From the IMG/VR virus record IMGVR_UViG_3300049793_000366, positions 248,001 through 312,000 of that record: a stretch of DNA of 64,000 nucleotides; one strand, given 5' to 3'. The position numbers were made by a program, and so were the translations under genes. Of the stretch, positions 1-63,641 are shown in pieces (the first letter of the stretch is position 1; each line of letters starts with the position of its first letter). The notes below the pieces were generated by a model. The model worked only from the letters and a program-made list of their open reading frames with translations. It was not told where the DNA came from and ran no database searches.

Positions 1-812
1 GATTGATGTGCCTCATCACAAGCTACTGTATGAAACTGTTTAAAGAATTCTTTTGGCCATTTCTCTAATGATTGATAGCATCCAATATAAATATTAGGAT
101 CACTAACGCCAGAATATTTACGTGGCTTATCAGACATTATCTCTTCTATCCTAAGGTCACATACTGGATATTTACTATCGTTTATTATAGCGTCTATTTT
201 AGAGTCTCTAACGGCTTGCATATTATTCTCACCATAATTGTATTCCATAATATTATCATAGAATTGTGTAACAAGTGATATAGACGGAACAATAATTAAT
301 ATTTTAGCATTTGGGTCAATCTTATGAAGTGTGTATAGAATAACAATTGATATTACTAATGATTTACCACCTGATGTAGCAACCTCAGCCATACAGTACC
401 TATTCTTCATTATCTTATAGGCAGTTTCTATCTGGTAGTCATATGGTGTGAATGACTTCCACTCATTTGTTTTCTTATCTAAAACTTTGTGATTTTTGAA
501 AAATTCAGTACAAAATTCTTGCACTGATTCGAGTGTGATATCTCTATTAAGCGGGAAGTCTTTTTTATTTTCAATGTCGAATTTAACACCTATTTCCTTA
601 GCAGCTAATAAGCATTCCTTCCATAATCCGAGATTAACCTTACCGGCATCGAAGTATGTTATATTACCATCCCACACGCCCATCTTAACAGCGGGCATGA
701 ATTTCCAACCTTTGGGTTTTCTCGTCAACCAAATATCCAACTGGTGGTACTCGATTCTTGTTGCTGACGATAAGATTAATTTTTCTTTTTCTGCATCATA
801 TCTGAATATCAT
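1..812 (-). CDS. uvsW: UvsW-like SF2 DNA helicase, N-terminal part (runs off the window start)
   Basis: Not in the ORF track; translated by hand from ATG at 812: MIFRYDAEKEK...GVWDG...PYDYQ (Q motif)...ATSGGKS (Walker A)...IIVPSISLVTQ (Ia)...CDEAHQ (Walker B). Confidence 0.9.
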   Translation of the reverse strand, partial: MIFRYDAEKEKLILSSATRIEYHQLDIWLTRKPKGWKFMPAVKMGVWDGNITYFDAGKVNLGLWKECLLAAKEIGVKFDIENKKDFPLNRDITLESVQEFCTEFFKNHKVLDKKTNEWKSFTPYDYQIETAYKIMKNRYCMAEVATSGGKSLVISIVILYTLHKIDPNAKILIIVPSISLVTQFYDNIMEYNYGENNMQAVRDSKIDAIINDSKYPVCDLRIEEIMSDKPRKYSGVSDPNIYIGCYQSLEKWPKEFFKQFHTVACDEAHQ

Positions 813-820
813 TAAGTTAC

Positions 821-847
821 TTATATCATTTTAAGTATATATTGTTT
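821..847 (-). promoter_or_regulatory. Putative phage middle promoter (AAAC-N16-GATATAA) for uvsW
   Basis: Matches the RAAC-N15/16-nnTAnAA motif recurring upstream of replication genes. Confidence 0.6.
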
Positions 848-909
848 TTGTTCAGTTTTATACGAGGGAGAAGACTATTACGGATATATAAAAGAAAAAT
901 CTAAAAATC

Positions 910-1305
910 ATGGAATTTTTAAAGAAAATAGCGAAATGGTGGAACGAAGACGTTAGAGGAAAAAAATGCACGGATGCTACGAAGTGTACCGAAAGTACAA
1001 CTTGTTGTGCTGAAGTTAAGTTAGAAGCTCCTGTTGCTGAAACTCAAGTTGTTGAAGAAATCAAAACTGGGTTACCTATCGAGAATTATATTCCACAGGT
1101 AGAAGATGAGGCTAAGGAAGTTATCACGATGTCTCCTGTTTCTGTAACTGAAACACCGGCTGCTGAGAATGAATTATCTCCTGCTGAGAAAGTAGAAAAG
1201 AAGAAATCAGCTTCTCCTGCTAAAGCACCAGCTAAAAAGAAGAAGCCTTCTAATAAGAATAAGGCTAAGAAATCCCCTACACCTAAGAAGCCAAAAGCAG
1301 AATAA
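910..1305 (+). CDS. Hypothetical protein with acidic middle and Lys/Pro-rich histone-like tail
   Basis: ORF; low-complexity KKKK/PAK tail; GATATATA at 883-890. Confidence 0.65.
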   Translation: MEFLKKIAKWWNEDVRGKKCTDATKCTESTTCCAEVKLEAPVAETQVVEEIKTGLPIENYIPQVEDEAKEVITMSPVSVTETPAAENELSPAEKVEKKKSASPAKAPAKKKKPSNKNKAKKSPTPKKPKAE

Positions 1306-3655: not shown

Positions 3656-3902
3656 CTACGACTTTTTTAATTAATTCATCGCGCTTATCACTCTTATAAG
3701 TTTTTTCATCATAAACTTCAATAATGAATCCATCTATTGTGAATTCACTAGCCCAGCAATCCCAGGTTTTATATTGTGGATGCTCGTTGAGTGCCAATTT
3801 CTTGGCTTTGTCTTCACTTTCTGCTACATAAGTAAATGATGGTAATGATTGGTGCCACCCGCCATCATTAAATGTAACTTTCCAAATTTTCAGTGCGCTC
3901 AT
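3648..3902 (-). CDS. Hypothetical protein with C-terminal R-tag (KRDELIKKVV)
   Basis: Overlapping operon ORF; shared motif. Confidence 0.7.
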   Translation of the reverse strand: MSALKIWKVTFNDGGWHQSLPSFTYVAESEDKAKKLALNEHPQYKTWDCWASEFTIDGFIIEVYDEKTYKSDKRDELIKKVVDE

Positions 3903-4303
3903 GTTATTATATTTAGAATCTTGTTATCTCTTAAATCCGTATATCCCTTAAAGCAGAATAGGTCTATTCTAATGATAACCTGTGAAAATCCATAATACAA
4001 GCTATCGACTATTCTCTGTACTGGTACACTCGTTGTTCCGTTCTTTCTCGTAATGGGACCAGATATTATCTCTAAGTAACAATTGAGTTCATCTGTCCAA
4101 TCTCCAACTTCATCTATCTCGTATTTGTGAAAAGGTTTAAGTTTGCTGTATGCGTTCTTAAAGTTTTCTCTATCTTCTTCGTCATTGAATCTATTGATGT
4201 GATACTCTGTGAACCACTTATCTATAAATTCGATATCATTTATCTTTTCATTGAAGATGATGTATTTACCGTCAAATATGTAATCATTCGGATTAATCAC
4301 CAT
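3899..4303 (-). CDS. Hypothetical protein with C-terminal R-tag (LRDNKILNII)
   Basis: Overlapping operon ORF; shared motif. Confidence 0.7.
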   Translation of the reverse strand: MVINPNDYIFDGKYIIFNEKINDIEFIDKWFTEYHINRFNDEEDRENFKNAYSKLKPFHKYEIDEVGDWTDELNCYLEIISGPITRKNGTTSVPVQRIVDSLYYGFSQVIIRIDLFCFKGYTDLRDNKILNIIT

Positions 4304-4685
4304 CTTCTTTATTTAAAATATCACCAAGTCTTTTATCTCTCATGTATTGATTGGCATTGTTAAACCATTCAATACTTCTACTTTCTACCCAAGCTTCGTT
4401 CTTACCTTTACAGTGTATTGTAGAAAGACAATCATTCTCATTTGATGATGTATTTGGATATACCTTAACTATTCTTACTTTAGTGTGTGTACCAGCTATT
4501 TGTAGTTCTTCTACTTCGATGTAACCCTTTGAGCTATATCCACTGACGTTTATGATACCAAATCTACCAGTACCTCTTTCTTCCCATAAAGTCTTAACGA
4601 ATTGAATCTTCTGTTTAGTCATTAGACTCCAGACGATAAATCCGCCAAAGACTGCTCCGCATATGATATAAATAATTTCGGTCAT
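4293..4685 (-). CDS. Membrane-anchored hypothetical protein with C-terminal R-tag (MRDKRLGDIL)
   Basis: N-terminal hydrophobic helix; first gene after an early promoter. Confidence 0.75.
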   Translation of the reverse strand: MTEIIYIICGAVFGGFIVWSLMTKQKIQFVKTLWEERGTGRFGIINVSGYSSKGYIEVEELQIAGTHTKVRIVKVYPNTSSNENDCLSTIHCKGKNEAWVESRSIEWFNNANQYMRDKRLGDILNKEDGD

Positions 4686-6058: not shown

Positions 6059-6250
6059 TTAACCTAATAAATCATCTATTTTAGAGTCACGTTTCATCAT
6101 TTTTTCAATCATTTGGTATTCCTTGATTAGTCTGGTTTCTTCCGCTGCATAGTCTATGTATTTGAAGTTTTTTAAATCTTCAATCATCTCCGGTGTCCAT
6201 ACTGCGTTGACTTTAAAGGTACCAACCATACCATTCTCATCGACACTCAT
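6059..6250 (-). CDS. Small protein: gp23-like major capsid fragment plus C-terminal R-tag
   Basis: KVNAVWTPEMIEDL...ID.AAE resembles the gp23-family KLKA.WT/S.ELAQDL...DAEAEL segment; ends KRDSKIDDLLG. Confidence 0.65.
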   Translation of the reverse strand: MSVDENGMVGTFKVNAVWTPEMIEDLKNFKYIDYAAEETRLIKEYQMIEKMMKRDSKIDDLLG

Positions 6251-23116: not shown

Positions 23117-23314
23117 TTATTCTTCTTTTAATAATTCGTCTATTTTAGTTTCTCTGTTTGACATTTTAATTCTGCTTATCAATTCATCAGATGTACTATT
23201 TAGATATTCTGTATATGAGATGCTTTTATCCAACTCTTTTGCTATATACTCAGAATAGTCAATTTGTGCATTTAATGCTTCCATAACATATTCTTGGTAG
23301 CTAATTGTGTTCAT
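23117..23314 (-). CDS. Small protein with 14-aa YxEY repeats and C-terminal R-tag (NRETKIDELL)
   Basis: ISYQEYV / IDYSEYI / ISYTEYL. Confidence 0.7.
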   Translation of the reverse strand: MNTISYQEYVMEALNAQIDYSEYIAKELDKSISYTEYLNSTSDELISRIKMSNRETKIDELLKEE

Positions 23315-23516
23315 CTATGACAATTTTTATTTTTTCATCTCGTTTTCTACTACCGAAAGTAGATACTATTTCATTTAACTCAGATAAATCATCTGGTATT
23401 GAACCAGCGTTATACCAATTGCCATCCAAAAACACACATATTATACTTTCATCTGCGTTAAAAAAACAATCTCCATGTTGTGGGTTCTTAATAGGACCTG
23501 ATAACCAATTTAGCAC
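23301..23516 (-). CDS. Small protein with fibre-like P..GD.FFN...W motif and C-terminal R-tag (KRDEKIKIVI)
   Basis: ORF after a middle promoter. Confidence 0.65.
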   Translation of the reverse strand: MLNWLSGPIKNPQHGDCFFNADESIICVFLDGNWYNAGSIPDDLSELNEIVSTFGSRKRDEKIKIVIDEHN

Positions 23517-26855: not shown

Positions 26856-28301
26856 TTATAGTCCACCGAATATATCCATAATCACGGTCAATCTTGATGT
26901 TATCTCAGGCATACCTAATGGATCAATAATTGAATTGATAGGTGATAAGATACATTTAAAAAATTGTGTGTCGTAATCAATTTCTGGAGCATACTCTACT
27001 GGATGCGATCCTCTTATGTATGCGAATACGTTATTGTCACCCTTACAATAGTAATATTTAATCTTAGTACCAGATTTGATAAATGTGTATTTATCTTGAT
27101 ACTTTTGATTCTTATATAGTAAGTGATTATATAACGCCGCTGCTTTTACTGCAAAGTGCGCTCCACTCACGAATTCTAGTTTCTCTTTATCATCAAGAAC
27201 TTTCTCGTTGTAGTTAGAACATGATGACTGCATTGCTATCTCATCGATATCTGCTAATTCAAATTCTTTACGTAAGCCTTTTACTAACTTTAATAATTCT
27301 TTGATGTTGAATGATTCTGGATTTGTAAATAAATATTTTACAATATCTACAATCTTCTCCCTTGCGAAAGCTGGTGTTGATGAACGTACAAGCTCTACAC
27401 CTTTTGGATATAAGTACTTGAAACGTTCGTGTGGAATACCATCCTCCCAAGATACGTGTTGTATGTATTTCTTCTTAGCGATGTTTATAATAGACTCTGA
27501 TACACGCTCTAACTCGAAATCTTCCTTATTGTCTACACCGAATGAACCAGCGTATTCTTCTAATGAATCTCTAAAGAATTGTGCTATTCTGAATTTATCA
27601 ACAGCGTGTACAAAATCTAACTCTCTGAAAAAGTTAGGGATAATCTTAGTAGTAACATCTTTTAAATCCTTACTACCAACAAAGTAGCCATCAATAACTA
27701 ATGTTTCTATATTATTATCAGCTATAACATTTTTAATGTTTTTTAAGCCACCTATACCAAAGTTATCATACTCTGCTATGTAACCAATGAAACTTGGATT
27801 ATCAATTTCAATATCAATTTCATTTCTAAGTAATATTGCAAATGGTTTATCGATAGTTGATAAGAACTCATCATTGATTACTTGATTTTTCCAATCACAT
27901 CTTTTTATAGCTGGACCAAATCCAACAAACACTGAGTCGGTATCAGCGTAGATACTAACTTCTAAATCGCCTGGTTTTTCTGGGTCTATTGGTGTTAATG
28001 GTTTTACATTTTTAATATAAAGCATATTATGTAAATCAGTATCAAGATGCCATTGATTCCACCAATAATCTTGAGTTTTCTTAGACATGGTTTTAGTTAA
28101 ATCACGTCCTTGTGCTGTTATCGTACCAGCTACTTGGTTATTGAATAATATGAAGTGTTGATTAGCGAAGGCTCCATATGAACCATTTAGTACGAGTTTA
28201 AGAGCTAATTGCAAGGCATTATAATAATCCACTTCTTTTTTAAGTGTATTAGCCTTGTTTTTAAGTTCTTCTATTTTATTTATCTTTTCCGTCCTTGTCA
28301 T
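26856..28301 (-). CDS. Family B DNA polymerase, C-terminal subunit (split gp43B-like)
   Basis: KLVLNGSYG (motif B), YADTDS (motif C), AKKKY, KGVE..RSSTP; no exonuclease or motif A. Confidence 0.9.
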   Translation of the reverse strand: MTRTEKINKIEELKNKANTLKKEVDYYNALQLALKLVLNGSYGAFANQHFILFNNQVAGTITAQGRDLTKTMSKKTQDYWWNQWHLDTDLHNMLYIKNVKPLTPIDPEKPGDLEVSIYADTDSVFVGFGPAIKRCDWKNQVINDEFLSTIDKPFAILLRNEIDIEIDNPSFIGYIAEYDNFGIGGLKNIKNVIADNNIETLVIDGYFVGSKDLKDVTTKIIPNFFRELDFVHAVDKFRIAQFFRDSLEEYAGSFGVDNKEDFELERVSESIINIAKKKYIQHVSWEDGIPHERFKYLYPKGVELVRSSTPAFAREKIVDIVKYLFTNPESFNIKELLKLVKGLRKEFELADIDEIAMQSSCSNYNEKVLDDKEKLEFVSGAHFAVKAAALYNHLLYKNQKYQDKYTFIKSGTKIKYYYCKGDNNVFAYIRGSHPVEYAPEIDYDTQFFKCILSPINSIIDPLGMPEITSRLTVIMDIFGGL

Positions 28302-28341: not shown

Positions 28342-29292
28342 TTATGATACTAATTTTTCCAAATTATTTATCCGCTTCCATTCTTTAGTTCCCATAAATA
28401 TTAGCTCATATTCTTGTAGAAAAGCTGCATAACTACCCATAACTTTTATGGCATCTTCTGCCCATTTGGAATCTCTGTTTGGTACTAAGTGATATGGAAT
28501 CCATTGTTTGACGTATATGTTTTTATCATCATAAACAAGGTCTTTGAAATGATTCTCACCATTAGGAGTACCGAGTATTGTTATCTTAGTGTTTTTTCGC
28601 GCTATTGCTGTTAGTTGATATACTTGACTGAATCTTCTTACAGCAGTAGGTGATAAGTGACCATAACCATCTACAATAGTAAAATCATAAGTCATACCCA
28701 AAGTTGAACCAGCACTGCCGTAGAATGTTCCTATTTTAATACATGAGCCATTATCGAATACTATTCTACTATTTGACATACTGAGTATACCAAGTTTAGC
28801 ATAGTAAGGTAAATTCTCATATAGAATTTTAATTTTTTCTAAAATTCTTTTAGCACCATCTATTTTATTATCCGTTATAAGTATTTTCTTATCATCCTGA
28901 TATGCATAGTGTAAAGCTTGTAATGCCAATATCAATGTCATTCCACTTTGTCTGGAATTGATTATAGTGTTAAACCTATTTGATTTGTAATTTTGTAAGG
29001 CTTGTGCTTGATATGGACGAAGTGAGACTGATGCGTAGCCTAAGTTACCAGTTAATGTTTTTGTAAGAGATAATAAATACTCAGGATCATCTTGTATTTT
29101 AAGTTTAGATGCTATTTCTTCTTCTGTGTAGTCGAATATAATACCAGATGCGCGATGTGCCTCATTTCTCCTATAATATGGTTGTGTGCGTGGGTATTCT
29201 GGTTCAATACCTAATAAACCTCCTAATTTCTTATCTCGGTTCTTTTGTTTCTCACTTCTACATTCTAATAATTCTGTTGACCAATTACTCAT
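28342..29292 (-). CDS. Degenerate terminase large-subunit ATPase domain (gp17-like) with R-tags at both ends
   Basis: LRPYQ, SRQSGMT (K>M), IVDGY (DE>DG), GTPNGENHF, FLQEYEL; no nuclease domain. Confidence 0.8.
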   Translation of the reverse strand: MSNWSTELLECRSEKQKNRDKKLGGLLGIEPEYPRTQPYYRRNEAHRASGIIFDYTEEEIASKLKIQDDPEYLLSLTKTLTGNLGYASVSLRPYQAQALQNYKSNRFNTIINSRQSGMTLILALQALHYAYQDDKKILITDNKIDGAKRILEKIKILYENLPYYAKLGILSMSNSRIVFDNGSCIKIGTFYGSAGSTLGMTYDFTIVDGYGHLSPTAVRRFSQVYQLTAIARKNTKITILGTPNGENHFKDLVYDDKNIYVKQWIPYHLVPNRDSKWAEDAIKVMGSYAAFLQEYELIFMGTKEWKRINNLEKLVS

Positions 29293-34076: not shown

Positions 34077-34461
34077 GAAAATGACCACCGATTTACTCAC
34101 AGCTTATGATTTAATCTGGGAGTCAAAGTACACGACAGTTATACTTGGTGTTGGTACGCAGATAGATGAAGGAGTGACTGAGCTTGTTATCGATTATGTA
34201 GAAATATCAAAGTCTAAAATACCTCTTAGAGATAAAGAGGTATTTGGCGTTTCAGATGATTGTATAACGCTATCTGACTTTATATCAGATGTTTACTATC
34301 CGCAAAGACAGGCACCGGATGATTCCTGTGTAAAGGATGTTAATAAAACTTTAGGTAAATGGTGGGTTAATAATCAACTATTTAAGATTGTGAGTATAGA
34401 AGAATATCTAAACTGGAAATCAGAACAACGTAATAACACCATTGATACAATAATAGAATGA
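34069..34461 (+). CDS. Hypothetical protein with C-terminal R-tag (QRNNTIDTII)
   Basis: ORF; motif. Confidence 0.7.
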   Translation: MYKKMTTDLLTAYDLIWESKYTTVILGVGTQIDEGVTELVIDYVEISKSKIPLRDKEVFGVSDDCITLSDFISDVYYPQRQAPDDSCVKDVNKTLGKWWVNNQLFKIVSIEEYLNWKSEQRNNTIDTIIE

Positions 34462-35054: not shown

Positions 35055-35425
35055 AAGCCAAAATGCTCTCATATAAAAAGTTTGCACTGGTATTAGACCT
35101 ACCAGTTATGTCTACTGAGAAAGCCGCTAAGTATGGTGATATAACAGAGCATAGATGGACTACGATTGAATATATGATTCGATACCGTATTCCTGTTTCT
35201 GTTGTTTCTAATAACTATATCAATCCTTGCGATGATAAGAAATCGATAAAGCAATTTTTCGATAGCAAATTCAAAGGTCGTTATAGAATTGTATCTGAGA
35301 ATAAATCTGTTAGACTACCAGATGGTAGAATAATGAATGTATATTTACCAACAAACATAAAAGTATTTAAAAGTTTACAAGAGTTGAGAGATATCTCAAT
35401 TGAATCACTATTAGAGGAAGATTAA
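35048..35425 (+). CDS. Hypothetical protein with C-terminal R-tag (LRDISIESLL)
   Basis: ORF; motif. Confidence 0.7.
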   Translation: MLEAKMLSYKKFALVLDLPVMSTEKAAKYGDITEHRWTTIEYMIRYRIPVSVVSNNYINPCDDKKSIKQFFDSKFKGRYRIVSENKSVRLPDGRIMNVYLPTNIKVFKSLQELRDISIESLLEED

Positions 35426-35426: not shown

Positions 35427-35888
35427 ATGACAACACGACCATTTATTTTATATTTTAGCTTCATGCTTACATTTTTAGCACTCGCTATATTTGTACACCC
35501 GTTATACACGATAGGCTGTGCTGTACCGGCAGTTGTACTCACTATTATGGAGTTTATAATATGCTCTGATTCTGATGATAGTAAAATTTTTGCGTTTGTC
35601 TATATTGGTAAACTAAAAAGGGTGAAAACAGAATTTAGTAGATTCTATGTAACCGTCAATAATAAAAAACGTTCTGTTTTATATCAAGATAAGTTTTTTT
35701 ATATGAAAAGTATATCATATACAGGTTTTGAAAATATGGATAAGCTAAAGGAGTGGGTGAAGCATAATGTTGAATATACTTGTTCAAACATTAAAGCTAA
35801 ATCAGATTTAAAGAAGGAATTGATGTTATGGAATGGCCACATTGATAAACAGGTCGAAAGAAATGAAAAATTAAACGAAGTATTATGA
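35427..35888 (+). CDS. Membrane protein with C-terminal R-tag (ERNEKLNEVL)
   Basis: Two N-terminal TM segments; motif. Confidence 0.7.
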   Translation: MTTRPFILYFSFMLTFLALAIFVHPLYTIGCAVPAVVLTIMEFIICSDSDDSKIFAFVYIGKLKRVKTEFSRFYVTVNNKKRSVLYQDKFFYMKSISYTGFENMDKLKEWVKHNVEYTCSNIKAKSDLKKELMLWNGHIDKQVERNEKLNEVL

Positions 35889-38374: not shown

Positions 38375-38594
38375 TTTTAACTACTCATACACCGCGTGTA
38401 AATGTGGTACAGTACCAGTAAAGGGCGATATATTTAGGTATATATCGCCCTATGGTTCTGAGTATGAAGCAACAGTAAAATCAATAGAGGGTTCTAGTAT
38501 TGTATCTGAAAAGGGTATTAAATATGCTTGTAGTGAGGTAATAATTATTACCAAAATAAAAGAAAGGCAAAAAAAGTTGGACAAATTGTTATAA
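38364..38594 (+). CDS. Small SH3/KOW-like protein with C-terminal R-tag (ERQKKLDKLL)
   Basis: Probable GTG start at 38364; motif. Confidence 0.6.
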   Translation: MPNSFNYSYTACKCGTVPVKGDIFRYISPYGSEYEATVKSIEGSSIVSEKGIKYACSEVIIITKIKERQKKLDKLL

Positions 38595-38607: not shown

Positions 38608-38610
38608 CAT

Positions 38611-38889
38611 ATGAATCCGAGTGAACTTTGGTTATTAAAACAAACCATTAAAAACGGCACATATAAATTTAAGGTTGGTGACGTAGTTGTTGTTTCACAT
38701 AGAAACAATAAAGGTTATCCTAAAAAACTGCACGATGATGTTGACTATAAAATAGTAGCAATTGAAGGTGAGTCAGTGAGCCTTGTGAGTGACGGCTTGG
38801 ATAAGTATAATGCTATTAAAGTAAATAGATACTACGTTATGCCAAAAGGTATAATACGTGATATAAAACTTGATTTAATATTTAAATAA
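38611..38889 (+). CDS. Small SH3/KOW-like protein with C-terminal R-tag (IRDIKLDLIF)
   Basis: FKVGDVVVV; motif. Confidence 0.7.
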   Translation: MNPSELWLLKQTIKNGTYKFKVGDVVVVSHRNNKGYPKKLHDDVDYKIVAIEGESVSLVSDGLDKYNAIKVNRYYVMPKGIIRDIKLDLIFK

Positions 38890-40118: not shown

Positions 40119-40123
40119 CTTCA

Positions 40124-40387
40124 ATGAAAGTTATGTGTATTCAAAACAATTTGGATAATAAACCAGTGAAAAATATCACTGTTGGTAAAGTTTATGTAGC
40201 TCAGGATGTGACAGATATGAAAAAACAATTTGCACATCAATCAGAAAGTCCGTATATTTTCAATATTCCTGATAAGGACGTATATCAGATACCAGATGAT
40301 GCTGGTGGTAGATATAGTCTTTATGATATTAGGTTATTTAAACCGATATCAGAAATAAGGTATGAAAAACTAAATTTGTTGTTATGA
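40124..40387 (+). CDS. Small SH3-like protein with C-terminal R-tag (IRYEKLNLLL)
   Basis: MKVMCI...ITVGKVY; motif. Confidence 0.7.
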   Translation: MKVMCIQNNLDNKPVKNITVGKVYVAQDVTDMKKQFAHQSESPYIFNIPDKDVYQIPDDAGGRYSLYDIRLFKPISEIRYEKLNLLL

Positions 40388-44157: not shown

Positions 44158-44179
44158 TGGACTAATCCATAAAATATCT

Positions 44180-44626
44180 ATGAACTACGGGAAAATTGAT
44201 AAGCTTATTGGTAAACACATGAGATCCAACTTCGGAAAAAGTTCCGAAAGACGAGATTATTTTAAAATGGAGCGAGAAGATAAGCGCGGTGGTTTCAAAG
44301 GGTATGGTGAGAAGAATGGCATTATGTATTTAGCCGATGTAATGAATTCTTACTACATCGATGTGAACATAATGCCTAAGGTTGAAGAAAAAGATGCAAC
44401 AGAGGGTACTGTTAAGATGGTATTTCGTGCTGACGATGATGATTTGATAAGAATATACTTTAACTTCAAAGACACGAATGAAATAAATGTAAAATATTTT
44501 ATGGAGCTTGTGTGGGAATATTTACAGATGGAGAAAAGATGGCACAGCAAAGTTCACGAGTTCTCGAATGGAATCTTATCACCGGAATTCTTGAGAAATA
44601 ATCAAATAGAAAATATTTTAAAATGA
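44180..44626 (+). CDS. Early hypothetical protein with C-terminal R-tag (LRNNQIENIL)
   Basis: Start at ATG 44180 after the promoter. Confidence 0.7.
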   Translation: MNYGKIDKLIGKHMRSNFGKSSERRDYFKMEREDKRGGFKGYGEKNGIMYLADVMNSYYIDVNIMPKVEEKDATEGTVKMVFRADDDDLIRIYFNFKDTNEINVKYFMELVWEYLQMEKRWHSKVHEFSNGILSPEFLRNNQIENILK

Positions 44627-45363: not shown

Positions 45364-45661
45364 TATAGGCGACTTCATTGTTAATGACTCTGATGATTGG
45401 GCATCATTCTATCCACACTGTCAGAGATTCAGACAAATAGGACATATCGGTGTTATAATAGATAGAAAAGTAGAAACTAATCCTTTATGTCCACTATATG
45501 GTACTTGGGGTTATTTAATTGCTTTTAATGTTGGTGTGTATTGTAGCAAAGCAGAAAATCAAATTAGAAGAGATAATAGGATTTTAGAATCAAGTAAAAT
45601 AAAACTCGAAGCTATTAAATTAATAGAATTGAGAGAGATAAAATTGAATGAATTATTATGA
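45344..45661 (+). CDS. Small SH3/KOW-like protein with C-terminal R-tag (LREIKLNELL)
   Basis: KYNIGDFI; motif. Confidence 0.65.
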   Translation: MLKPKYNIGDFIVNDSDDWASFYPHCQRFRQIGHIGVIIDRKVETNPLCPLYGTWGYLIAFNVGVYCSKAENQIRRDNRILESSKIKLEAIKLIELREIKLNELL

Positions 45662-46434: not shown

Positions 46435-46744
46435 AGGCAACGCTACATGGAAGTGTAAAATTACAATGTCTTCATCACCAAGAATGGAGAATGCAATATG
46501 GAAACAAGATTTTATAAAAGATAAATGGTACGATGTAGAATATGAGATTCATTCAAATCCTGAAACAGCGAGAATAAATGGTGGTTACAGAAAGATATGG
46601 GTGGTTAATGAGTCTGGTAAAAGAGTTGAGTTTGGTTCTACGCACATTAGGATTATGTTCCATAACGAATACAACAAAACTGATATGAGGGAAAGTCAAA
46701 TTGATAATATTTTAAACGACGATGGACACAGCGAGAATACTTAA
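46424..46744 (+). CDS. Hypothetical protein with C-terminal R-tag (MRESQIDNIL)
   Basis: ORF; motif. Confidence 0.65.
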   Translation: MYIKGNATWKCKITMSSSPRMENAIWKQDFIKDKWYDVEYEIHSNPETARINGGYRKIWVVNESGKRVEFGSTHIRIMFHNEYNKTDMRESQIDNILNDDGHSENT

Positions 46745-47792: not shown

Positions 47793-48127
47793 AAAAGAAT
47801 TTAGAAATACATATTTTAGAATCAGAGATTGCCTTTTCATATATGCTACGTAAGAGAGAAGCATATGAAAGAGGTTCTGATGTTGATCCATTTCAAGTAT
47901 TTACTTATAATGAAATTATAACTAAGTTAGATAGACCATTGTGTGTAATGAAGAATGCAATGCAATTGGACTTAGAAGATGATAAAAATTATAGTAATAC
48001 TTTTTCATATATCTGTATGTCAATGTCTGAGAGGGGTAATAATGAATTTAAAGCAAATGATTTTAAGAGTTATAGAGATAGTTATATAAGAGAAAATAAA
48101 ATAGAAAGCATATTAAATGATATCTGA
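47762..48127 (+). CDS. Hypothetical protein with C-terminal R-tag (IRENKIESIL)
   Basis: ORF; start uncertain. Confidence 0.65.
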   Translation: MEKRLTNKILKKNLEIHILESEIAFSYMLRKREAYERGSDVDPFQVFTYNEIITKLDRPLCVMKNAMQLDLEDDKNYSNTFSYICMSMSERGNNEFKANDFKSYRDSYIRENKIESILNDI

Positions 48128-48545
48128 AATTAAAGACATACTTAAAGAGGGTAAGATAGAAACGTTGGAACAATTTAAGCCCATATTTATGGGATTTGCT
48201 GATGTCACTTATTCATATTGTGGTTATATAAGAACATCTGTTTATGTAAAGGCAAAAGAAGCTGGTGAGTTAGAATATTATAAAGAGAAATCAAATCAAT
48301 GGGAAGTGTTTATGCGAGGTCATGTTGATTTGTTTATTGATATGTATGAGCAAGACCGTTATATGTCAGTTTATAACAATAGTAATCTAGAAATGTTATT
48401 TAATCAAGTGGGTACAGTATGGCAAAATGTATCACAACTATCAGAAGAAGCTAACTACCGATTGGATCTTAATTTACTCACTTTTATGAATTATTACAGA
48501 GATTTAATCAGAGTGGATAAGCTTAATAATTTATTAAAAGAATAG
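48117..48545 (+). CDS. Hypothetical protein with C-terminal R-tag (IRVDKLNNLL)
   Basis: ORF; motif. Confidence 0.7.
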   Translation: MISEIKDILKEGKIETLEQFKPIFMGFADVTYSYCGYIRTSVYVKAKEAGELEYYKEKSNQWEVFMRGHVDLFIDMYEQDRYMSVYNNSNLEMLFNQVGTVWQNVSQLSEEANYRLDLNLLTFMNYYRDLIRVDKLNNLLKE

Positions 48546-49169: not shown

Positions 49170-49619
49170 GTGGGATTTAACAAACGGTTCGTGAATAAAG
49201 AAACAATATTAATAGCATTAAAAGAAGAAGGAGTAAAGGGACTTATACAAGTACTTAATGCTGATGCTTTGATAACCGATGAGTGGGCAAGTCTATTCAT
49301 TGATGATTACTCAAAAAACACGAAGGGGTTTTTAAAAGCAAGAACATTAATAGAATCTGAAACTAAATTCTCATCAACGCATAGTGTTATCTATGGTCAC
49401 AAGTGTTGGAATGATATTGAATCACCAGCTTGTTTATTGGTTATGATGTACACTGACCCAAGCTGGACAGAAGTACTTAAATCTATCGAAATGTTTAACC
49501 CAATTATAGATAAAGATGATGTTGGTAAATTCGACAGATTAAAAGTCAAAGCAATCAAATCTGCAACTCAGTACTTCGATTTAAAAGTAAGAACTGAGAA
49601 TTTAGAAAAACTTATTTAA
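49170..49619 (+). CDS. Hypothetical protein with C-terminal R-tag (VRTENLEKLI)
   Basis: GTG start; motif. Confidence 0.7.
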   Translation: MGFNKRFVNKETILIALKEEGVKGLIQVLNADALITDEWASLFIDDYSKNTKGFLKARTLIESETKFSSTHSVIYGHKCWNDIESPACLLVMMYTDPSWTEVLKSIEMFNPIIDKDDVGKFDRLKVKAIKSATQYFDLKVRTENLEKLI

Positions 49620-58378: not shown

Positions 58379-58954
58379 ATGATAATATGGACAATTATAT
58401 CAGTTAACGTCTTAGTAAGTACGTTTTTATTGATAAAGGTTTTGAGAATGAAGGAAATTACAATAAAGGAAACTATTATTAAAGAAGTTCCAGTTGAAAG
58501 AGTAGTTTATAAAGCACCTGACTATTTACTAAATAATCCACAGGTATTATTCAGAATGCCAGAGTTTACTATGTCAGAAAAAGACATATTCAATATAGTT
58601 AGGTCTTTGGAAGAAGATATTGACAAATGGGCATTCTCACTGAGTACACTTGGTGGTGATTCTTTCTTTGTAGAACGTACAACCGCAAGTAATAAAAGAA
58701 TTCAGTTATATATCGATGGTTTAAGTAAAAAGGACGATAAGGATTTAAGAGTCAGAATGCTTCAACCTATAAACATGGATATTGACAAGAAATGGAATGA
58801 TACTTTCAAACATCTTTTGTTTCCAGAGTTTAGAACACTTTATAATAAAAAAGTAAAAGCTGAAATGGACAAAAGCTCAGAATTGAGTGAGGATATCAGT
58901 GGTTTATTAAGTAAAACTCAGAAAAGAGACGACACTCTAAATAAGTTATTATAA
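58379..58954 (+). CDS. Membrane-anchored early protein with C-terminal R-tag (KRDDTLNKLL)
   Basis: N-terminal TM segment; motif. Confidence 0.75.
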   Translation: MIIWTIISVNVLVSTFLLIKVLRMKEITIKETIIKEVPVERVVYKAPDYLLNNPQVLFRMPEFTMSEKDIFNIVRSLEEDIDKWAFSLSTLGGDSFFVERTTASNKRIQLYIDGLSKKDDKDLRVRMLQPINMDIDKKWNDTFKHLLFPEFRTLYNKKVKAEMDKSSELSEDISGLLSKTQKRDDTLNKLL

Positions 58955-59375: not shown

Positions 59376-59891
59376 ATGGTAATAAAATTATCCCCTGCTA
59401 AATTAGAGTTTGTTTTGAATAAAGCAATTGCTCACTTTGAGGCTGGTAGTTCGATTAAGATAGATACCCCAATTTATAGTGATACTGAGTACAAATTCAG
59501 TGGTGAAGAAACGATTGATATGCCACTAAAACCAAATGAAACAGGTTATGTAGCCGGTACTTCTAAAACAAAGAGGAAGCAATTTCATTTCAGTTATTGT
59601 ATATCCATAAAGGATAATAAGTTAACCAGAATCAGAGTGAATAGTGATGGTGACATAACATATGTATTCGATGGTACTGAGAGTAAGAAGTTAACATCTG
59701 ATTTTATTAAGCGTTTCTTTCTCAAGATATATGAAATTGAGAATGCTGAATTTAAAAAGGTTTACGCATCCTATGACGATACAGAAGAGCGAAATGAAAA
59801 ATTATCGGAATTACTTGGTAGCACAGAAGGAGAAGAAAAGAAAGAAATTATAAACAATAAAGAAGTCGCCAAGAAGAAATGGTGGCAATAA
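59376..59891 (+). CDS. Hypothetical protein with near-C-terminal R-tag (ERNEKLSELL)
   Basis: ORF; motif. Confidence 0.7.
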   Translation: MVIKLSPAKLEFVLNKAIAHFEAGSSIKIDTPIYSDTEYKFSGEETIDMPLKPNETGYVAGTSKTKRKQFHFSYCISIKDNKLTRIRVNSDGDITYVFDGTESKKLTSDFIKRFFLKIYEIENAEFKKVYASYDDTEERNEKLSELLGSTEGEEKKEIINNKEVAKKKWWQ

Positions 59892-60441: not shown

Positions 60442-60856
60442 TTATAGAGTTTTATTAGTTAATGACAAAGAAGAATGCTTTGTTATTGATAAGGGTTTAA
60501 AATTCTTCTCCAAAGAAGAACCTAAAGATAAAAACTCATTTGTTTGGTATTCACCAACCACTAAGGTTTTTAACCTTACAATCAGAGTTAGAATGAATGC
60601 TGATTGTCAAAATTGGTTGAGTATAAACAATACTGAATTAAGTGTTTATGTTTATAATAAAGAAAGTAAGAAATGGTTAGGTTATGCTGAGACCACTCTT
60701 AAAAGAAGGGGTTTATCTAAGACAACTGAATGGACAATAGAAGATGTGATGCTGAAGTATAAAAGTGAAGTTAGTATGACATCCGATTTAATTGAAAGCT
60801 TGGATTCATTCACTAAACAAGTATTGCGAGATTCGACTTTAAATGAACTATTATAG
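60434..60856 (+). CDS. Hypothetical protein with C-terminal R-tag (LRDSTLNELL)
   Basis: Start adjusted to ATG 60434. Confidence 0.7.
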   Translation: MCDYRVLLVNDKEECFVIDKGLKFFSKEEPKDKNSFVWYSPTTKVFNLTIRVRMNADCQNWLSINNTELSVYVYNKESKKWLGYAETTLKRRGLSKTTEWTIEDVMLKYKSEVSMTSDLIESLDSFTKQVLRDSTLNELL

Positions 60857-61265
60857 GTTATTCGAAAGAATTGGCTTTAAGAGAAAGAAGGAAGCTATGC
60901 TACCTGGTTCTGAGTATGACTATACTAACAGAAAGGGAACATATGTTCTTAAAAATCACATTCTAAGCGAAGTGAAAGGCTATGAATCTACACATAGATA
61001 TTACACAAGCTGGGAATATAAAATTAATGATGAATTGTCAATTTGGATTAATACATTCAAAATGTCTTCATTCACTGCTTACATCATCGACACAAGACCA
61101 AACGATAAATATAACATCGTTAATCAAATAATACTTGACAAGTACGATAGGTCACAGTCTTTGTCACCAAATATATGGGAAGCAATACTATTATCTCTAC
61201 CAGAGAGATATTCCTATGTGTCCAATCAATTATTAAGAAAAATACAGTTAGATAGACTTTTCTAA
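60843..61265 (+). CDS. Hypothetical protein with C-terminal R-tag (LRKIQLDRLF)
   Basis: ORF; motif. Confidence 0.7.
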   Translation: MNYYRLFERIGFKRKKEAMLPGSEYDYTNRKGTYVLKNHILSEVKGYESTHRYYTSWEYKINDELSIWINTFKMSSFTAYIIDTRPNDKYNIVNQIILDKYDRSQSLSPNIWEAILLSLPERYSYVSNQLLRKIQLDRLF

Positions 61266-62193: not shown

Positions 62194-62203
62194 TAATTAA
62201 AAA

Positions 62204-62797
62204 ATGAAAAAAGTATTAGTAAATGTATTGGGACTATCTTATAGTCAAACGCAAAGCGGAGCTTATGCTGTTGTATTGTCTGAACCCAAAGGTAACAGGA
62301 AGTTACCAATTATCGTTAACTCAACCGATGCACAAACAATTGCACTTAGGTTAGAAGGTATTAAAACACAACGTCCACTGACACATGATTTGTTTAAGTC
62401 ATTCACAGAGGTCTTTAATGCGGATCTTGTTGAGGTTAGTATTTATAGCTTAGTAGAAGGTATCTTTATGACTAAGTTAGTATTTAATGATGGTGTTCAA
62501 GATATTGAACTCGATTGTACAATTGGTGATGGTATAGCACTTGCTATGATTTACCAAAGTCCAATCTATGTCGCTGAGTTTGTAATCAGCTCTGCTGGTA
62601 TTGTTGTTGATGAAGACGATGTTGCTCGATATGAAGATGGTGAGGACGTTGACGATGCCGAAATTATTGAAGAAAAACCAAGAAGAAGCACTGTCGAAGA
62701 GTTGGAAATTATGTTACAAAAAGCACTTGATGATGAACAGTATGAAGTCGCTGCTCAAGTGCGTGATAAAATAAATTCGTTAAAAGAAAATCGCTAA
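62204..62797 (+). CDS. Bifunctional nuclease (DUF151) with C-terminal UVR domain
   Basis: LPII...AQTIA...RPLTHDL; ALDDEQYEVAAQVRDKI. Confidence 0.9.
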   Translation: MKKVLVNVLGLSYSQTQSGAYAVVLSEPKGNRKLPIIVNSTDAQTIALRLEGIKTQRPLTHDLFKSFTEVFNADLVEVSIYSLVEGIFMTKLVFNDGVQDIELDCTIGDGIALAMIYQSPIYVAEFVISSAGIVVDEDDVARYEDGEDVDDAEIIEEKPRRSTVEELEIMLQKALDDEQYEVAAQVRDKINSLKENR

Positions 62798-62838
62798 AAC
62801 GTAATATCCATAAGGAAAATTATTATATATAGGATATT

Positions 62839-63054
62839 ATGACCTCTATTATTAAGATATACTGCTTACGTATTCGATTACGAAAACTCAAAAAAAGAAG
62901 AGACGAGGCGATGGCCAAACTCATTTCAGCTCACCCAAGTAGGGCCGCTAAAATGGATAGACCTGAGGACTTAGACTCGAAATTATTTGAGGAAATAGAC
63001 AGACAGATAGTAAAGTATAAAAGACTTATAGAAAAAGCAAAAAAAGAGAGTTAA
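62839..63054 (+). CDS. Small basic late hypothetical protein
   Basis: TTATATATA at 62823-62831. Confidence 0.55.
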   Translation: MTSIIKIYCLRIRLRKLKKRRDEAMAKLISAHPSRAAKMDRPEDLDSKLFEEIDRQIVKYKRLIEKAKKES

Positions 63055-63070
63055 TTAACTCTCTTTTTTT
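63039..63070. terminator. Bidirectional terminator (32-bp perfect palindrome)
   Basis: AAAAAAAGAGAGTTAATTAACTCTCTTTTTTT between convergent genes. Confidence 0.8.
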
Positions 63071-63641
63071 ATAGTAGCATATTTAAGCTTATAATTCTTT
63101 CCAGTGATGCTATCTCATTTCGAATATCTTCTCTATCTATAACAGGAACACGACTAGTATTTTGATGGAAAATATTACCACCTGGATAAGCATATCTTGT
63201 ACTCTTCACTAAATCCTTTTCTATTTTAGGATATAACTCTCTGAATAAATCGAGAGCATTATGTATTTTAATGTAGTCAGTTAGTATTTGAAAAAAATCA
63301 ACATCGTGTTTACTAAATGTATCGTGTATCTTTGGATTCATAGCGTATGTTTTAACCGCATTTAATATATCCTCTTTGACTATCTCTTCACCTCTCTTAT
63401 TGAGTAAGAGAAGTCTTCTATCTGGCTTAGAGAAGTTTTTTACAAAATAAAATGGCTTATCTAATTTATGTAGATGTGTTATTATTTTCTTAATCTCGGT
63501 ATAGTACCCAATGTCAAAATTTATAAGATAGCTATCGGAATTTGATTCGTATCTAAGTATTGGTCTTGTGTGTATATTGAAACAATACAAACAATCATCC
63601 TTTATACTCCAGCTATTATTTAATATTAATTTATCAAGCAT
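63069..63641 (-). CDS. Hypothetical protein with C-terminal R-tag (ERIISLNMLL)
   Basis: ORF; motif. Confidence 0.7.
   Translation of the reverse strand: MLDKLILNNSWSIKDDCLYCFNIHTRPILRYESNSDSYLINFDIGYYTEIKKIITHLHKLDKPFYFVKNFSKPDRRLLLLNKRGEEIVKEDILNAVKTYAMNPKIHDTFSKHDVDFFQILTDYIKIHNALDLFRELYPKIEKDLVKSTRYAYPGGNIFHQNTSRVPVIDREDIRNEIASLERIISLNMLL

What the first reader, a model, noticed from the sequence alone, without database searches (positions are those of the whole stretch)
183..63641. One C-terminal peptide tag (R-x-x-K-[IL]-x-x-[IL]-[IL]) on about 25 unrelated phage proteins: candidate undescribed docking system
SEEN: unrelated ORFs end in the same 9-residue amphipathic motif. The instances are RDELIKKVV (3648), RDNKILNII (3899), RDKRLGDIL (4293), RDSKIDDLL (6059), RETKIDELL (23117), RDEKIKIVI (23301), RINNLEKLV (28342), RNSNLAQLL (32301), RNNTIDTII (34069), RDISIESLL (35048), RNEKLNEVL (35427), RQKKLDKLL (38364), RDIKLDLIF (38611), RYEKLNLLL (40124), RNNQIENIL (44180), REIKLNELL (45344), RESQIDNIL (46424), RENKIESIL (47762), RVDKLNNLL (48117), RTENLEKLI (49170), RDDTLNKLL (58379), RNEKLSELL (59376), RDSTLNELL (60434), RKIQLDRLF (60843) and RIISLNMLL (63069). 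That is close to a third of the genes. The Arg is invariant but its codon varies (AGA, CGT, CGA, AGG), so selection is on the peptide, not a DNA repeat. The tag occurs on soluble and membrane-anchored proteins, mostly behind early or middle promoters. It is absent from the host-like metabolic enzymes and from proteins with the N-terminal capsid-targeting motif. INFERENCE: a variable domain plus a constant docking helix is the design of an adaptor library feeding one hub. Candidate hubs are (a) the phage sliding clamp, (b) a protease or unfoldase, making these substrate adaptors or degrons, and (c) a compartment-targeting receptor. I know of no description of this motif but cannot search the literature.
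Basis: partly seen in the sequence, partly recalled or inferred. Interest (0 to 1): 0.95.

Follow-up and report, generated by a model that had tools for sequence, protein, structure and literature searches.

The report
Shared C-terminal peptide tag in huge phages
About a fifth of the proteins of this 0.5-Mb phage, mostly small, fast-evolving early proteins of unknown function, end in the same short Arg-plus-Leu/Ile helix, which is kept by selection on the peptide and looks like an undescribed address tag for a partner that I could not identify.

Summary
All 25 peptides exist at or near a stop codon. The window belongs to a 508-kb huge phage related to the Bacteroidetes-infecting "Mahaphage" genomes.

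- **Enrichment:** 147 of 732 genes end in R-x3-[ILV]-x2-h-h, against 7-10 expected from internal, shuffled, N-terminal and reversed controls.
- **Selection on the peptide:** Arg is invariant and Lys is not enriched. All six Arg codons are used at about background frequency.
- **Carriers:** they are largely unrelated, lack Pfam or PHROG matches, sit in early-type operons and turn over fast. Only 13% have an ortholog in a sister phage, against 43% of other genes. The tag persists where the protein body has diverged.
- **Distribution:** LR745206, LR756502 and LR756504 are also tag-rich. LR756501 has few R-tags and carries a different tag, DPYGEE-x-W. LR756500 has none.
- **Structure:** one AlphaFold model shows a confident domain, a linker and a less confident tag helix.

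The docking-tag reading is therefore plausible, but no hub was identified. No clamp gene was found, and the PolB tail resembles the tag only in two genomes. A phage ClpP and a ClpC-like unfoldase exist, but no evidence links them to the tag. I found no description in the literature. Verdict: a genuine, apparently new feature whose mechanism is unresolved.

The parts
3657..3683 (-). tag RDELIKKVV, 2 aa before stop of gene 3648-3902
3905..3931 (-). tag RDNKILNII, 1 aa before stop of gene 3899-4303
4314..4340 (-). tag RDKRLGDIL, 6 aa before stop of gene 4293-4685. This is a membrane-anchored family with 334 library representatives in which the tag Arg and Lys are among the five best-conserved positions.
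6065..6091 (-). tag RDSKIDDLL, gene 6059-6250
23129..23155 (-). tag RETKIDELL, gene 23117-23314. The body of this protein resembles the repeats of the prohead protease/scaffold protein.
23316..23342 (-). tag RDEKIKIVI, 4 aa before stop of the gene ending at 23301
28348..28374 (-). C-terminal tag copy RINNLEKLV of the terminase-ATPase-like protein 28342-29292, conserved in 6 orthologs
29212..29238 (-). second, N-terminal tag copy RDKKLGGLL (residues 19-27) of the same protein, conserved in 6 orthologs
26868..26894 (-). tag-like tail RLTVIMDIF(GGL) of the C-terminal half of the split family B DNA polymerase (26856-28301). A weak match: 5.8 bits, at the lower edge of the tagged class.
32580..32606 (+). 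tag RNSNLAQLL, gene 32301-32612
34429..34455 (+). tag RNNTIDTII, gene 34069-34461. This ORFan has no homolog among 5.8 billion proteins.
35387..35413 (+). tag RDISIESLL, gene 35048-35425
35859..35885 (+). tag RNEKLNEVL at the stop of gene 35427-35888 (two membrane segments)
38565..38591 (+). tag RQKKLDKLL at the stop of the gene ending 38594
38857..38883 (+). tag RDIKLDLIF, gene 38605-38889
40358..40384 (+). tag RYEKLNLLL, gene 40103-40387
44594..44620 (+). tag RNNQIENIL, gene 44117-44626
45632..45658 (+). tag REIKLNELL, gene 45323-45661
46688..46714 (+). tag RESQIDNIL, 9 aa before the stop
48089..48115 (+). tag RENKIESIL, 3 aa before the stop
48510..48536 (+). tag RVDKLNNLL, gene 48117-48545
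49590..49616 (+). tag RTENLEKLI, gene 49170-49619
58925..58951 (+). tag RDDTLNKLL, gene 58379-58954 (N-terminal membrane anchor)
59790..59816 (+). tag-like RNEKLSELL, 24 aa before the stop of gene 59376-59891, so sub-terminal
60827..60853 (+). tag RDSTLNELL at the stop of the gene ending 60856
61236..61262 (+). tag RKIQLDRLF, gene 60843-61265
63072..63098 (-). tag RIISLNMLL at the stop of gene 63069-63641. A weaker match that lacks the polar positions 1, 3 and 5.

Best explanation
**What it is.** The motif is a portable recognition helix selected at the peptide level. It is about 9-14 residues long. Its hydrophobic face is formed by positions -1, 4, 7 and 8, flanked by an invariant Arg and a Lys/Gln. 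It sits at the cytoplasmic C-terminus of very many otherwise unrelated proteins, mostly small, early-expressed and rapidly replaced. It occurs in a clade of huge phages predicted to infect Bacteroidetes.

**How it most likely works.** The helix acts in trans. It hangs on a short linker and docks its carrier onto one shared partner. This makes the carriers a library of variable modules with one common handle.

**What is shown.** Peptide-level selection, unrelated carriers, clade-wide conservation, early-gene bias, and a linker-plus-helix model in one case.

**What is inferred.** That it binds a single partner, and which partner.

**My guess for the partner.** I favour a transiently acting processing machine over a stable scaffold, because about 150 clients share the motif. 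The candidate I can name in this genome is the phage's own Clp system: ClpP, plus a ClpC-like unfoldase that lacks the usual N-domain and carries an acidic N-terminal extension. Tagged proteins would be either adaptors or timed-turnover substrates.

**Probabilities.** About 0.55 that it is a trans-acting docking or recognition tag for a shared partner. About 0.2 that the partner is the Clp machine.
For: - **Enrichment and controls:**
- **Codon variation at background frequencies:**
- **Unrelated carriers without family matches:**
- **Clade-wide presence with drifting consensus:**
  - LR745206 has 136 tagged of 896 genes.
  - LR756504 has the consensus [YH]-R-K-x-I-I-x-[DE]-L-[LI].
  - LR756502 has at least 14 tags in its first 10 kb.
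  - LR756501 has a small R-T-x-L-I-D-K-h-L set.
- **Fast turnover of the bodies with a stable tag:** only 19 of 147 tagged genes have a reciprocal best hit in LR745206, against 249 of 585 untagged genes. Tag state is concordant or near-concordant in those pairs.
- **Deep conservation in one family:** it has 334 library representatives with 27% mean column identity. The tag Arg and Lys are two of its five most conserved positions, always at the C-terminus.
- **Early-gene bias:** 16 tagged against 165 untagged genes behind the putative late promoter TTAATATATA, compared with 44 against 97 behind host-type promoters.
- **AlphaFold model:** a three-helix bundle with pLDDT above 89, a 9-residue linker, then the tag helix at about 68.
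- **The motif also works as an internal or N-terminal element:** it is conserved in both places in six orthologs of the terminase-like protein.
- **Clp candidates:** ClpP. The ClpC-like unfoldase has a UVR motif, a GVGF loop and no Clp_N domain.
- **Precedent for interchangeable C-terminal docking tails on unrelated phage proteins:** T4 gp43, gp55 and gp33 (PMC2988020).
Against: - No partner was identified, and no binding was or could be tested.
- The Clp link rests on presence alone. LR756501 has R-tags but no ClpP. The LR756504 unfoldase has neither the acidic extension nor the GVGF loop. The unfoldase family is common in viral contigs whose flanks carry few tags, although the LR745206 locus is also locally tag-free, so that test is uninformative.
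- A helix at a variable distance (0-10 aa) from the carboxyl end is unlike pore-recognised degrons.
- It is hard to see why selection would hold a pure degron on about 150 separate proteins.
- The second AlphaFold model was too poor to use.
- My gene calls are crude greedy ORFs.
Confidence: 0.55

Rival explanations
1. Sliding-clamp docking motif (PIP-like). The tag plugs positions 4, 7 and 8 into the clamp's hydrophobic pocket, as the C-terminal tails of T4 gp43, gp55 and gp33 do, and so recruits carriers to phage DNA.
For: - The spacing h4-x-x-h7-h8 near the C-terminus equals the PIP-box spacing (established knowledge) and fits the hydrophobic-acidic T4 tails.
- The PolB C-half in this genome and in LR745206 ends R-L-[ST]-V-[IV]-M-D-I-F, which fits the pattern including the Arg.
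- A gp44 clamp-loader homolog is present.
- T4 provides a precedent.
Against: - No clamp was detected with PF02916, PF09116, PF00705, PF02768 or T4 gp45.
- The gp55 homolog has no tag.
- In tag-rich LR756504 the PolB tail has Lys and Thr where the tag has its invariant Arg and Ile. It ranks in the lower part of the PSSM distribution (82% of proteins score at least as well).
- The PolB match in this genome is weak (5.8 bits).
- About 150 mostly tiny early ORFans are implausible clamp clients.
- T4-type motifs are acidic and hydrophobic, not Arg- and Lys-bearing.
Confidence: 0.12
2. Self- or mutual-association helix. The tag pairs with other copies of itself to dimerise or oligomerise small effector domains, or to gather them into one assembly.
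For: - The terminase-like protein keeps one copy at each end in all six orthologs.
- Arg at position 0 and Asp/Asn/Glu at positions 1 and 5 could form inter-helix salt bridges (inference).
- An amphipathic helix on a linker fits this reading.
Against: - Nine to fourteen residues is short for a stable coiled coil.
- Indiscriminate heteromerisation among 150 proteins would be costly.
- Strict Arg specificity with no Lys tolerance is unusual for zipper-type contacts.
- Nothing was tested directly.
Confidence: 0.13
3. Constant structural element of one hyper-diverged superfamily. The carriers descend from tandemly duplicating small genes whose bodies diverged beyond recognition. The last helix stays because it is needed in cis, for folding or stability.
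For: - Tandem arrays of recognisable tagged paralogs occur in LR756504 and in this genome.
- When homologs are detectable they are usually tagged too (44 tagged against 15 untagged partners).
- Many small carriers start with a similar Gly-Asp-hydrophobic beta-barrel-like segment.
Against: - Carriers range from 60 to over 300 aa. Predicted classes differ: an all-helical bundle, a beta domain with a membrane anchor and a terminase ATPase fold.
- The tag helix has the lowest confidence in the good model and is separated by a linker.
- The motif also occurs at an N-terminus.
Confidence: 0.1
4. Targeting signal to a place rather than a protein machine: the prohead interior, the membrane or a phage-made compartment.
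For: - C-terminal capsid-targeting peptides are known (my knowledge of the HK97 protease and of encapsulin cargo).
- A small tagged protein in the window resembles the scaffold/protease repeats.
- In LR756501 the other tag, DPYGEE-x-W, sits on a prohead-protease-like protein, though below the Pfam cut-off.
Against: - The tag is depleted from late-promoter genes and enriched in early operons alongside nucleotide-metabolism and replication genes.
- The main protease/scaffold proteins carry no tag.
- Arg invariance argues against plain membrane binding.
Confidence: 0.07
5. A nascent-peptide or mRNA effect tied to translational coupling. The last codons serve re-initiation of the overlapping downstream gene in a host that lacks Shine-Dalgarno pairing.
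For: - Tagged genes are followed by a tightly coupled same-strand gene in 69% of cases, against 37% for untagged genes.
- They use TGA stops (ATGA overlaps) three times as often.
- The tag codons are A/T-rich.
Against: - All six Arg codons are used at about background frequency, so there is no RNA motif.
- The distance to the stop varies from 0 to 10 residues.
- Operon-terminal genes are tagged too.
- The motif is conserved at an N-terminus.
- Coupling is expected anyway in arrays of small early genes.
Confidence: 0.03

Closest known systems
T4-family sliding-clamp-binding C-terminal epitopes (gp43, gp55, gp33)
   Same: A short motif at the extreme C-terminus sits behind a variable linker on unrelated phage proteins and is interchangeable between them. 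The hydrophobic spacing is similar. A T4-like replication and late-transcription core is present in this genome (gp44 and gp55 homologs, PolB).
   Different: The T4 motif is acidic and hydrophobic (S-L-D-F-L-F/Y) and sits on a handful of replication and transcription proteins. Here there is an invariant Arg plus Lys, on about 150 mostly unknown early proteins. No clamp was found, and gp55 is untagged.
Adaptor or degron tails of Clp-type proteases (ssrA tag; SspB C-terminal ClpX-binding peptide; MuA C-terminus)
   Same: C-terminal peptides address otherwise unrelated proteins to one AAA+ machine. A phage ClpP and a ClpC-like unfoldase are encoded here.
   Different: The sequences are not similar. 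The tag is helical and tolerates 0-10 trailing residues. The unfoldase lacks the N-domain that normally receives adaptors. No co-variation between the tag and the unfoldase was seen.
Poxvirus ankyrin proteins with a C-terminal PRANC/F-box-like domain (my knowledge)
   Same: A large viral family of variable binding modules carries one constant C-terminal handle that plugs into a single host hub. This is the logic of an adaptor library in a large DNA virus.
   Different: In poxviruses the handle is a folded domain, the variable part is a single repeat family, and the hub is eukaryotic SCF. Here the handle is a 9-14-residue helix on unrelated bodies in a bacterial virus.
C-terminal translocation signals of type IV secretion effectors (Legionella Dot/Icm; my knowledge)
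   Same: One loosely defined C-terminal signal sits on hundreds of unrelated, fast-evolving ORFan-like proteins.
   Different: Those signals are compositional (Glu-rich, with small polar residues) rather than a sharp motif with an invariant residue. No secretion apparatus is implied here.

Membership tests
T4-type clamp-binding C-terminal epitope | Hydrophobic-acidic consensus S-L-D-F-L-[FY] at the extreme C-terminus | tested here: not met
   The T4 gp43 and gp55 tails were read from the T4 record. The tag consensus has Arg, Lys and Asn with Leu/Ile and no aromatic preference.
T4-type clamp-binding C-terminal epitope | Present on the DNA polymerase and on the late transcription factors gp55 and gp33 | tested here: inconclusive
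   The PolB C-half tail is tag-like in this genome and in LR745206 but not in LR756504. The gp55 homolog is untagged. gp33 was not identified.
T4-type clamp-binding C-terminal epitope | A cognate gp45-type clamp is encoded | tested here: not met
   PF02916, PF09116, PF00705, PF02768 and T4 gp45 gave no match in the 508-kb record. A gp44 homolog exists. The record was cut from a 712-kb contig, so a divergent clamp, or one outside the record, is not excluded.
PIP box (PCNA-interacting peptide) | Q-x-x-[LIM]-x-x-[FY]-[FY] | tested here: not met
   The spacing of positions 4, 7 and 8 fits. Position 1 is Asp/Glu/Asn rather than Gln, and positions 7 and 8 are Leu/Ile (Phe in 2 and 16 of 147).
ssrA-like pore-recognised C-terminal degron | Fixed register to the free carboxyl end and an unstructured tail | tested here: not met
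   The motif ends 0-10 residues before the stop, is predicted helical and is also conserved near an N-terminus.
Adaptor docking peptide for a Clp unfoldase (SspB-type) | A folded domain, a flexible linker and a short terminal peptide that binds the unfoldase's N-domain | tested here: inconclusive
   The architecture fits in one model. The phage ClpC-like unfoldase has no Clp_N domain. Binding cannot be tested with these tools.
Capsid-targeting C-terminal peptide (HK97 protease or encapsulin cargo type) | Carried by proteins made late and packaged into the shell | tested here: not met
   The tag is depleted behind the putative late promoter, with 16 tagged against 165 untagged genes. The protease/scaffold proteins are untagged. 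No virion proteome is available.
Membrane-targeting amphipathic helix (MinD/FtsA type) | Basic plus hydrophobic periodicity, with Lys and Arg interchangeable | tested here: not met
   Arg gives 147 hits against 6.9 expected, while Lys gives 9 against 11.5. Acidic or amide residues are preferred at positions 1 and 5.
Type IX secretion C-terminal domain (Bacteroidetes) | A 70-100-residue beta-sandwich domain behind a Sec signal peptide | tested here: not met
   The conserved part is 9-14 residues. No Pfam domain was found. The membrane-anchored carriers place the tag on the side with the positive charges, which I infer to be the cytoplasm.

The most novel reading that the evidence does not exclude
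This clade of huge phages may run an adaptor-library system. Hundreds of rapidly evolving small early proteins would each bind a different host or defence target, and all would plug through one invariant-Arg helix into a single phage or host machine, for example a Clp-type protease. That would give a bacterial virus a programmable targeted-degradation or recruitment platform, analogous to the ankyrin/F-box families of poxviruses. Sister lineages would have swapped in other tags, such as DPYGEE-x-W in the 735-kb phage.
Probability: 0.2. Interest if true: 0.95.

Novelty: categorically new. Interest (0 to 1): 0.86.

Why it matters
Most genes of huge phages are ORFans with no route to a function. 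One peptide handle shared by a fifth of the proteome gives a single experimental entry point. Finding what binds the tag would assign about 150 proteins per genome to one pathway.

It would also be the first proteome-scale short linear motif system described in a bacterial virus. The tag offers a simple sequence marker for a functional class of early genes in metagenomic phage genomes. If the partner is a protease or recruitment hub, the tag would be a compact portable module for synthetic biology in Bacteroidota.

Related phages carrying a different C-terminal tag suggests that tag-and-hub systems may be a general feature of very large phages that has been overlooked.

Tried and rejected
- **DNA repeat or RNA element.** Rejected. 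Codons vary and follow background usage.
- **Composition artefact.** Rejected by tail shuffles, internal windows, N-termini and the reversed motif.
- **One paralog family.** Rejected at the sequence level by BLASTP and 3-round jackhmmer with the tails removed.
- **Known domain.** Pfam and PHROG scans of about 60 tagged proteins were almost all empty. One ESM Atlas look-up and one Foldseek search were uninformative.
- **M16 peptidase (window 37214-38374) as an Arg-rule processing enzyme.** It is present in LR745206, LR756504 and LR756501 but absent from LR756500. Since LR756501 has few R-tags, this does not discriminate, and the cleavage-site rules do not fit. Dropped.
- **Co-occurrence of ClpP or the ClpC-like unfoldase with the tag.** It looked promising across five genomes. 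It dissolved because architectures differ. The 80 IMG/VR loci test was uninformative, since the same locus in tag-rich LR745206 is also tag-free.
- **Terminase-flank loci from IMG/VR.** Uninformative, because that neighbourhood is also tag-poor in this genome.
- **Clamp search.** Five queries, all negative.
- **PolB-tail and tag co-variation.** It holds only for two orthologous genomes.
- **Cultured relative.** Tenacibaculum phage PTm1, 100-150 kb, has no tags.
- **Literature.** Six full-text searches and a reading of the huge-phage paper gave no mention of the motif.

Full report
**1. What the window is**

The window is bases 248001-312000 of a single 507,910-bp viral record with 33% G+C. CheckV rates it 97% complete. 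Two of its proteins are on record from a 711,805-bp contig, so the record was probably trimmed.

Its large terminase is 58-62% identical to that of the uncultured phages LR745206 (635 kb) and LR756502 (642 kb). It is about 43% identical to LR756504 (636 kb) and LR756501/3 (735 kb), and 29% identical to LR756500. The phage genomes above 634 kb described by Al-Shayeb et al. fall in the Mahaphage clade and are predicted to infect Bacteroidetes (PMC7162821). Bacteroidetes-type -7 boxes (TAnnTTTG) occur upstream of genes here.

Yes. All 25 peptides lie in open frames. Twenty-four end 0-9 residues before a stop and one ends 24 residues before it.

Genome-wide, 147 of 732 ORF-called genes of at least 60 aa carry R...[ILV]..[ILVMF][ILVMF] within 10 residues of the end. 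The controls give far fewer:

| Control | Genes matching |
|---|---|
| Expected from the internal rate | 6.9 |
| Tail-shuffled | 9.5 +/- 2.9 (max 18) |
| N-termini | 10 |
| Reversed motif | 13 |
| Random internal windows | 7.4 |

Relaxed patterns suggest about 160-180 true carriers. Arg is specific: every other residue at that position, including Lys (9 observed, 11.5 expected), is at background.

The logo is K(-4)-x-x-h(-1)-R-[DEN]-x-[KQ]-[IL]-[ND]-x-[IL]-[ILF], followed by 0-2 polar residues.

All six Arg codons and four Leu codons are used. Codon frequencies inside the tag are close to the genome background, apart from a mild preference for A-ending codons at position 7. Selection therefore acts on the peptide.

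**3. Who carries it?**

- **Size.** Carriers are small, with a median of 106 aa against 150 aa for all genes.
- **Relatedness.** They are largely unrelated. With tails removed, 16 of 147 have a BLASTP paralog. In an iterated jackhmmer search over about 1,500 proteins of this and related genomes, 31 of 185 cluster. The tagged clusters have nine members or fewer.
- **Family matches.** About 60 tagged proteins were scanned against Pfam or PHROGs, and almost none matched. The exceptions are a terminase-ATPase-like protein, a protein with an L7/L12 C-terminal-domain segment, a DUF6011 protein and an ankyrin protein whose tag is doubtful.
- **Enzymes are untagged.** The recognisable enzymes of the window are guanylate kinase, dephospho-CoA kinase, adenylosuccinate synthetase, an M16 peptidase, two DNA methylases, a Toprim protein, an ATP-grasp protein and a phosphoesterase. 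None carries the tag.
- **Membrane anchors.** About 9% of carriers have a membrane-anchor-like segment. In one such family the positive charges follow the anchor, so I infer that the domain and tag face the cytoplasm.

**4. Timing**

An upstream motif, TTAATATATA, is the most enriched 8-10-mer in front of genes. I take it to be the late promoter, but that is an inference.

| Promoter class the gene lies behind | Tagged | Untagged |
|---|---|---|
| TTAATATATA (putative late) | 16 | 165 |
| Host-type TAnnTTTG | 44 | 97 |
| CGTATAT | 21 | 36 |

Tagged genes lie in tight arrays. A coupled downstream gene follows 69% of them, against 37% of untagged genes.

**5. Conservation**

*Across genomes:*
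- LR745206, scanned whole, has 136 tagged of 896 genes against 6.9 expected.
- LR756504, from a 100-kb sample, has 36 of 189. Its consensus is shifted to T-h-x-E-[YH]-R-K-x-I-I-x-[DE]-L-[LI], and it has many looser R-K-x-R-I-[DE]-N-L variants.
- LR756502 shows at least 14 tags in its first 10 kb, many ending L-G-I.
- LR756501, scanned whole, has only about 13, all R-T-x-L-I-D-K-h-L.
- LR756500, scanned whole, has none: 4 observed against 3.4 expected.
- A 50-kb sample of the cultured Tenacibaculum phage PTm1 has none.

*Between this genome and LR745206:*
- Only 19 of 147 tagged genes have a reciprocal best hit, against 249 of 585 untagged genes.
- Tagged pairs are less similar than untagged pairs (37% against 48% median identity).
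- Most apparent tag losses are near-miss variants such as L-G-I endings.

*In one deep family:*
- The family containing window gene 4293-4685 has 334 representatives in a 1.8-billion-protein library.
- In 40 diverse members with 27% mean column identity, the tag Arg and Lys are two of the five most conserved positions. The tag is always terminal.
- A 2-kb contig from an unrelated run carries a family member, and the ORF just upstream of it is also tagged.

The tag is thus far more stable than the proteins that carry it.

**6. Structure**

An 87-aa carrier, modelled with three paralogs in the alignment, gives a confident three-helix bundle (pLDDT 87-97). A 9-residue non-helical linker follows, then the tag helix (residues 74-86). 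The last block has pLDDT 68. This is what a tethered docking helix would look like, but it is one model. The second model had a mean pLDDT of 48 and is unusable. Foldseek found no significant analog.

**7. Which partner?**

*(a) Clamp*
- T4 has interchangeable C-terminal clamp-binding tails on gp43, gp55 and gp33. They read S-L-D-F-L-F/Y.
- The tag shares the PIP-like spacing of positions 4, 7 and 8.
- Window gene 26856-28301 is the C-terminal half of a split family B polymerase. The N-terminal half lies at about 103 kb in the genome. Its tail, S-R-L-T-V-I-M-D-I-F-G-G-L, fits the tag pattern, as does its LR745206 ortholog.
- Against this, the match is weak (5.8 and 2.6 bits).
- The LR756504 tail has Lys and Thr at the two key positions. 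On that genome's own PSSM, 82% of proteins score at least as well.
- The gp55 homolog is untagged.
- No clamp could be found, although a gp44 homolog exists.

*(b) Protease or unfoldase*
- The genome encodes ClpP (E = 6e-68). It also encodes a 709-aa ClpC-like protein with two AAA modules, a UVR motif, a GVGF loop and no Clp_N domain, which has an acidic 50-residue N-terminus instead.
- Across five genomes, the unfoldase seemed to track the tag, but its architecture differs between tag-positive genomes.
- LR756501 lacks ClpP.
- The IMG/VR neighbourhood test was uninformative.

*(c) Place*
- Prohead targeting is disfavoured by the timing data, and the main protease/scaffold proteins are untagged.

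*(d) Self-association*
- The terminase-ATPase-like protein (window 28342-29292) has its Walker A Lys replaced by Met, Ile or Ser across orthologs. It carries a conserved tag copy at residues 19-27 as well as at its C-terminus, in all six orthologs.
- So the motif does not need a free carboxyl end, and two copies may pair or bind bivalently.

**8. Verdict**

The feature is genuine, strongly selected, clade-wide and, as far as six literature searches show, undescribed.

The best-supported reading is a trans-acting recognition helix shared by a large, rapidly renewing set of early proteins (about 0.55). The partner is unknown. My ranking of the more specific readings is:

| Reading | Probability |
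|---|---|
| Clp-type machine as partner | about 0.2 |
| Self-association helix | about 0.13 |
| Sliding clamp as partner | about 0.12 |
| Cis-acting structural element of one diverged superfamily | about 0.10 |
| Targeting to a place | about 0.07 |
| Translational-coupling effect | about 0.03 |

**Limitations**
- Gene calls are greedy ORFs.
- Promoter classes are inferred from motif enrichment.
- LR756502 and LR756504 were only sampled.
- No binding could be computed.

Noticed in passing
LR756501.1 (whole record, assembled from loci L110, L111, L132-L163): A different C-terminal tag, [IV]-F-S-x-x-D-P-Y-G-E-E-x-W-[DN], ends about 40 proteins of 65-843 aa. Codons vary, so selection is again on the peptide. 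It was not seen in the window's genome, in the first-sampled 150 kb of LR745206, or in the sampled parts of LR756504 and LR756500. One carrier is a small prohead-protease-like protein (Peptidase_S77, 24.7 bits, below the cut-off).
   Followed up: partly
window 26856-28301 (-) and genome 103256-103684 (+); window 29914-30390 (+): The family B DNA polymerase is split into two genes about 170 kb apart. An HNH endonuclease gene lies close to the C-terminal half.
   Followed up: partly
window 28342-29292 (-): A paralog of the large-terminase ATPase domain without a nuclease domain. Its Walker A Lys is replaced (G-M-T here, G-I-T, G-S-T or G-S-S in orthologs), so it is probably catalytically dead. 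It is conserved in at least six metagenomic relatives. The real terminase is at genome 74253-76424.
   Followed up: partly
genome-wide; for example window about 48560 (upstream of gene 48597-49160): TTAATATATA is strongly enriched just upstream of about 100 genes and is probably the phage's late promoter. T4-like TATAAATA also occurs. Host-type TAnnTTTG and a CGTATAT motif mark other gene classes.
   Followed up: partly
genome 189407-190066 (-) and 442219-444348 (+): The phage encodes ClpP and a ClpC-like double-AAA unfoldase. The unfoldase has no Clp_N domain and an acidic N-terminal extension. Relatives carry one to three ClpP genes, or none.
   Followed up: partly
genome 93393-95666 (+); window 23117-23314 (-); L191:8546-10669; L133:3913-6336: The prohead protease/scaffold fusion protein (about 700-800 aa) contains a long run of 13-residue repeats (Y-S-E-Y-[IL]-A-E-N-[LV]-D-K-N-I). 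Two 65-aa tagged proteins, one of them in the window, are made of the same repeat.
   Followed up: no
LR756500.1, for example 11601-15898 and 182153-188061: Paralog families end in N-A-D-D-F-G-F-F-D-N or G-N-Y-K-F-E-W. These are recognisable paralogs, not a tag on unrelated proteins.
   Followed up: no
genome 426700-427353 (+) (L020:1700-2353): A 217-aa tagged protein contains a segment matching the ribosomal L7/L12 C-terminal domain (E = 1.3e-6).
   Followed up: no
window 10649-16231 (+) and 51131-57526 (-): Two giant ORFs of 1860 and 2131 aa. The first has paralogs nearby and at genome 21-25 kb. They were not characterised.
   Followed up: no
whole record: The 507,910-bp record is labelled provirus, but its proteins are on record from a 711,805-bp contig. 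The phage genome may therefore be about 0.7 Mb, and some genes (clamp, protease paralogs) may lie outside the record.
   Followed up: no
LR756502.1 1-10000 (L293) and LR745206 orthologs: A tag variant ends L-G-I instead of L-L (for example K-L-N-K-L-G-I). My strict pattern misses it, so tag counts are underestimates.
   Followed up: partly
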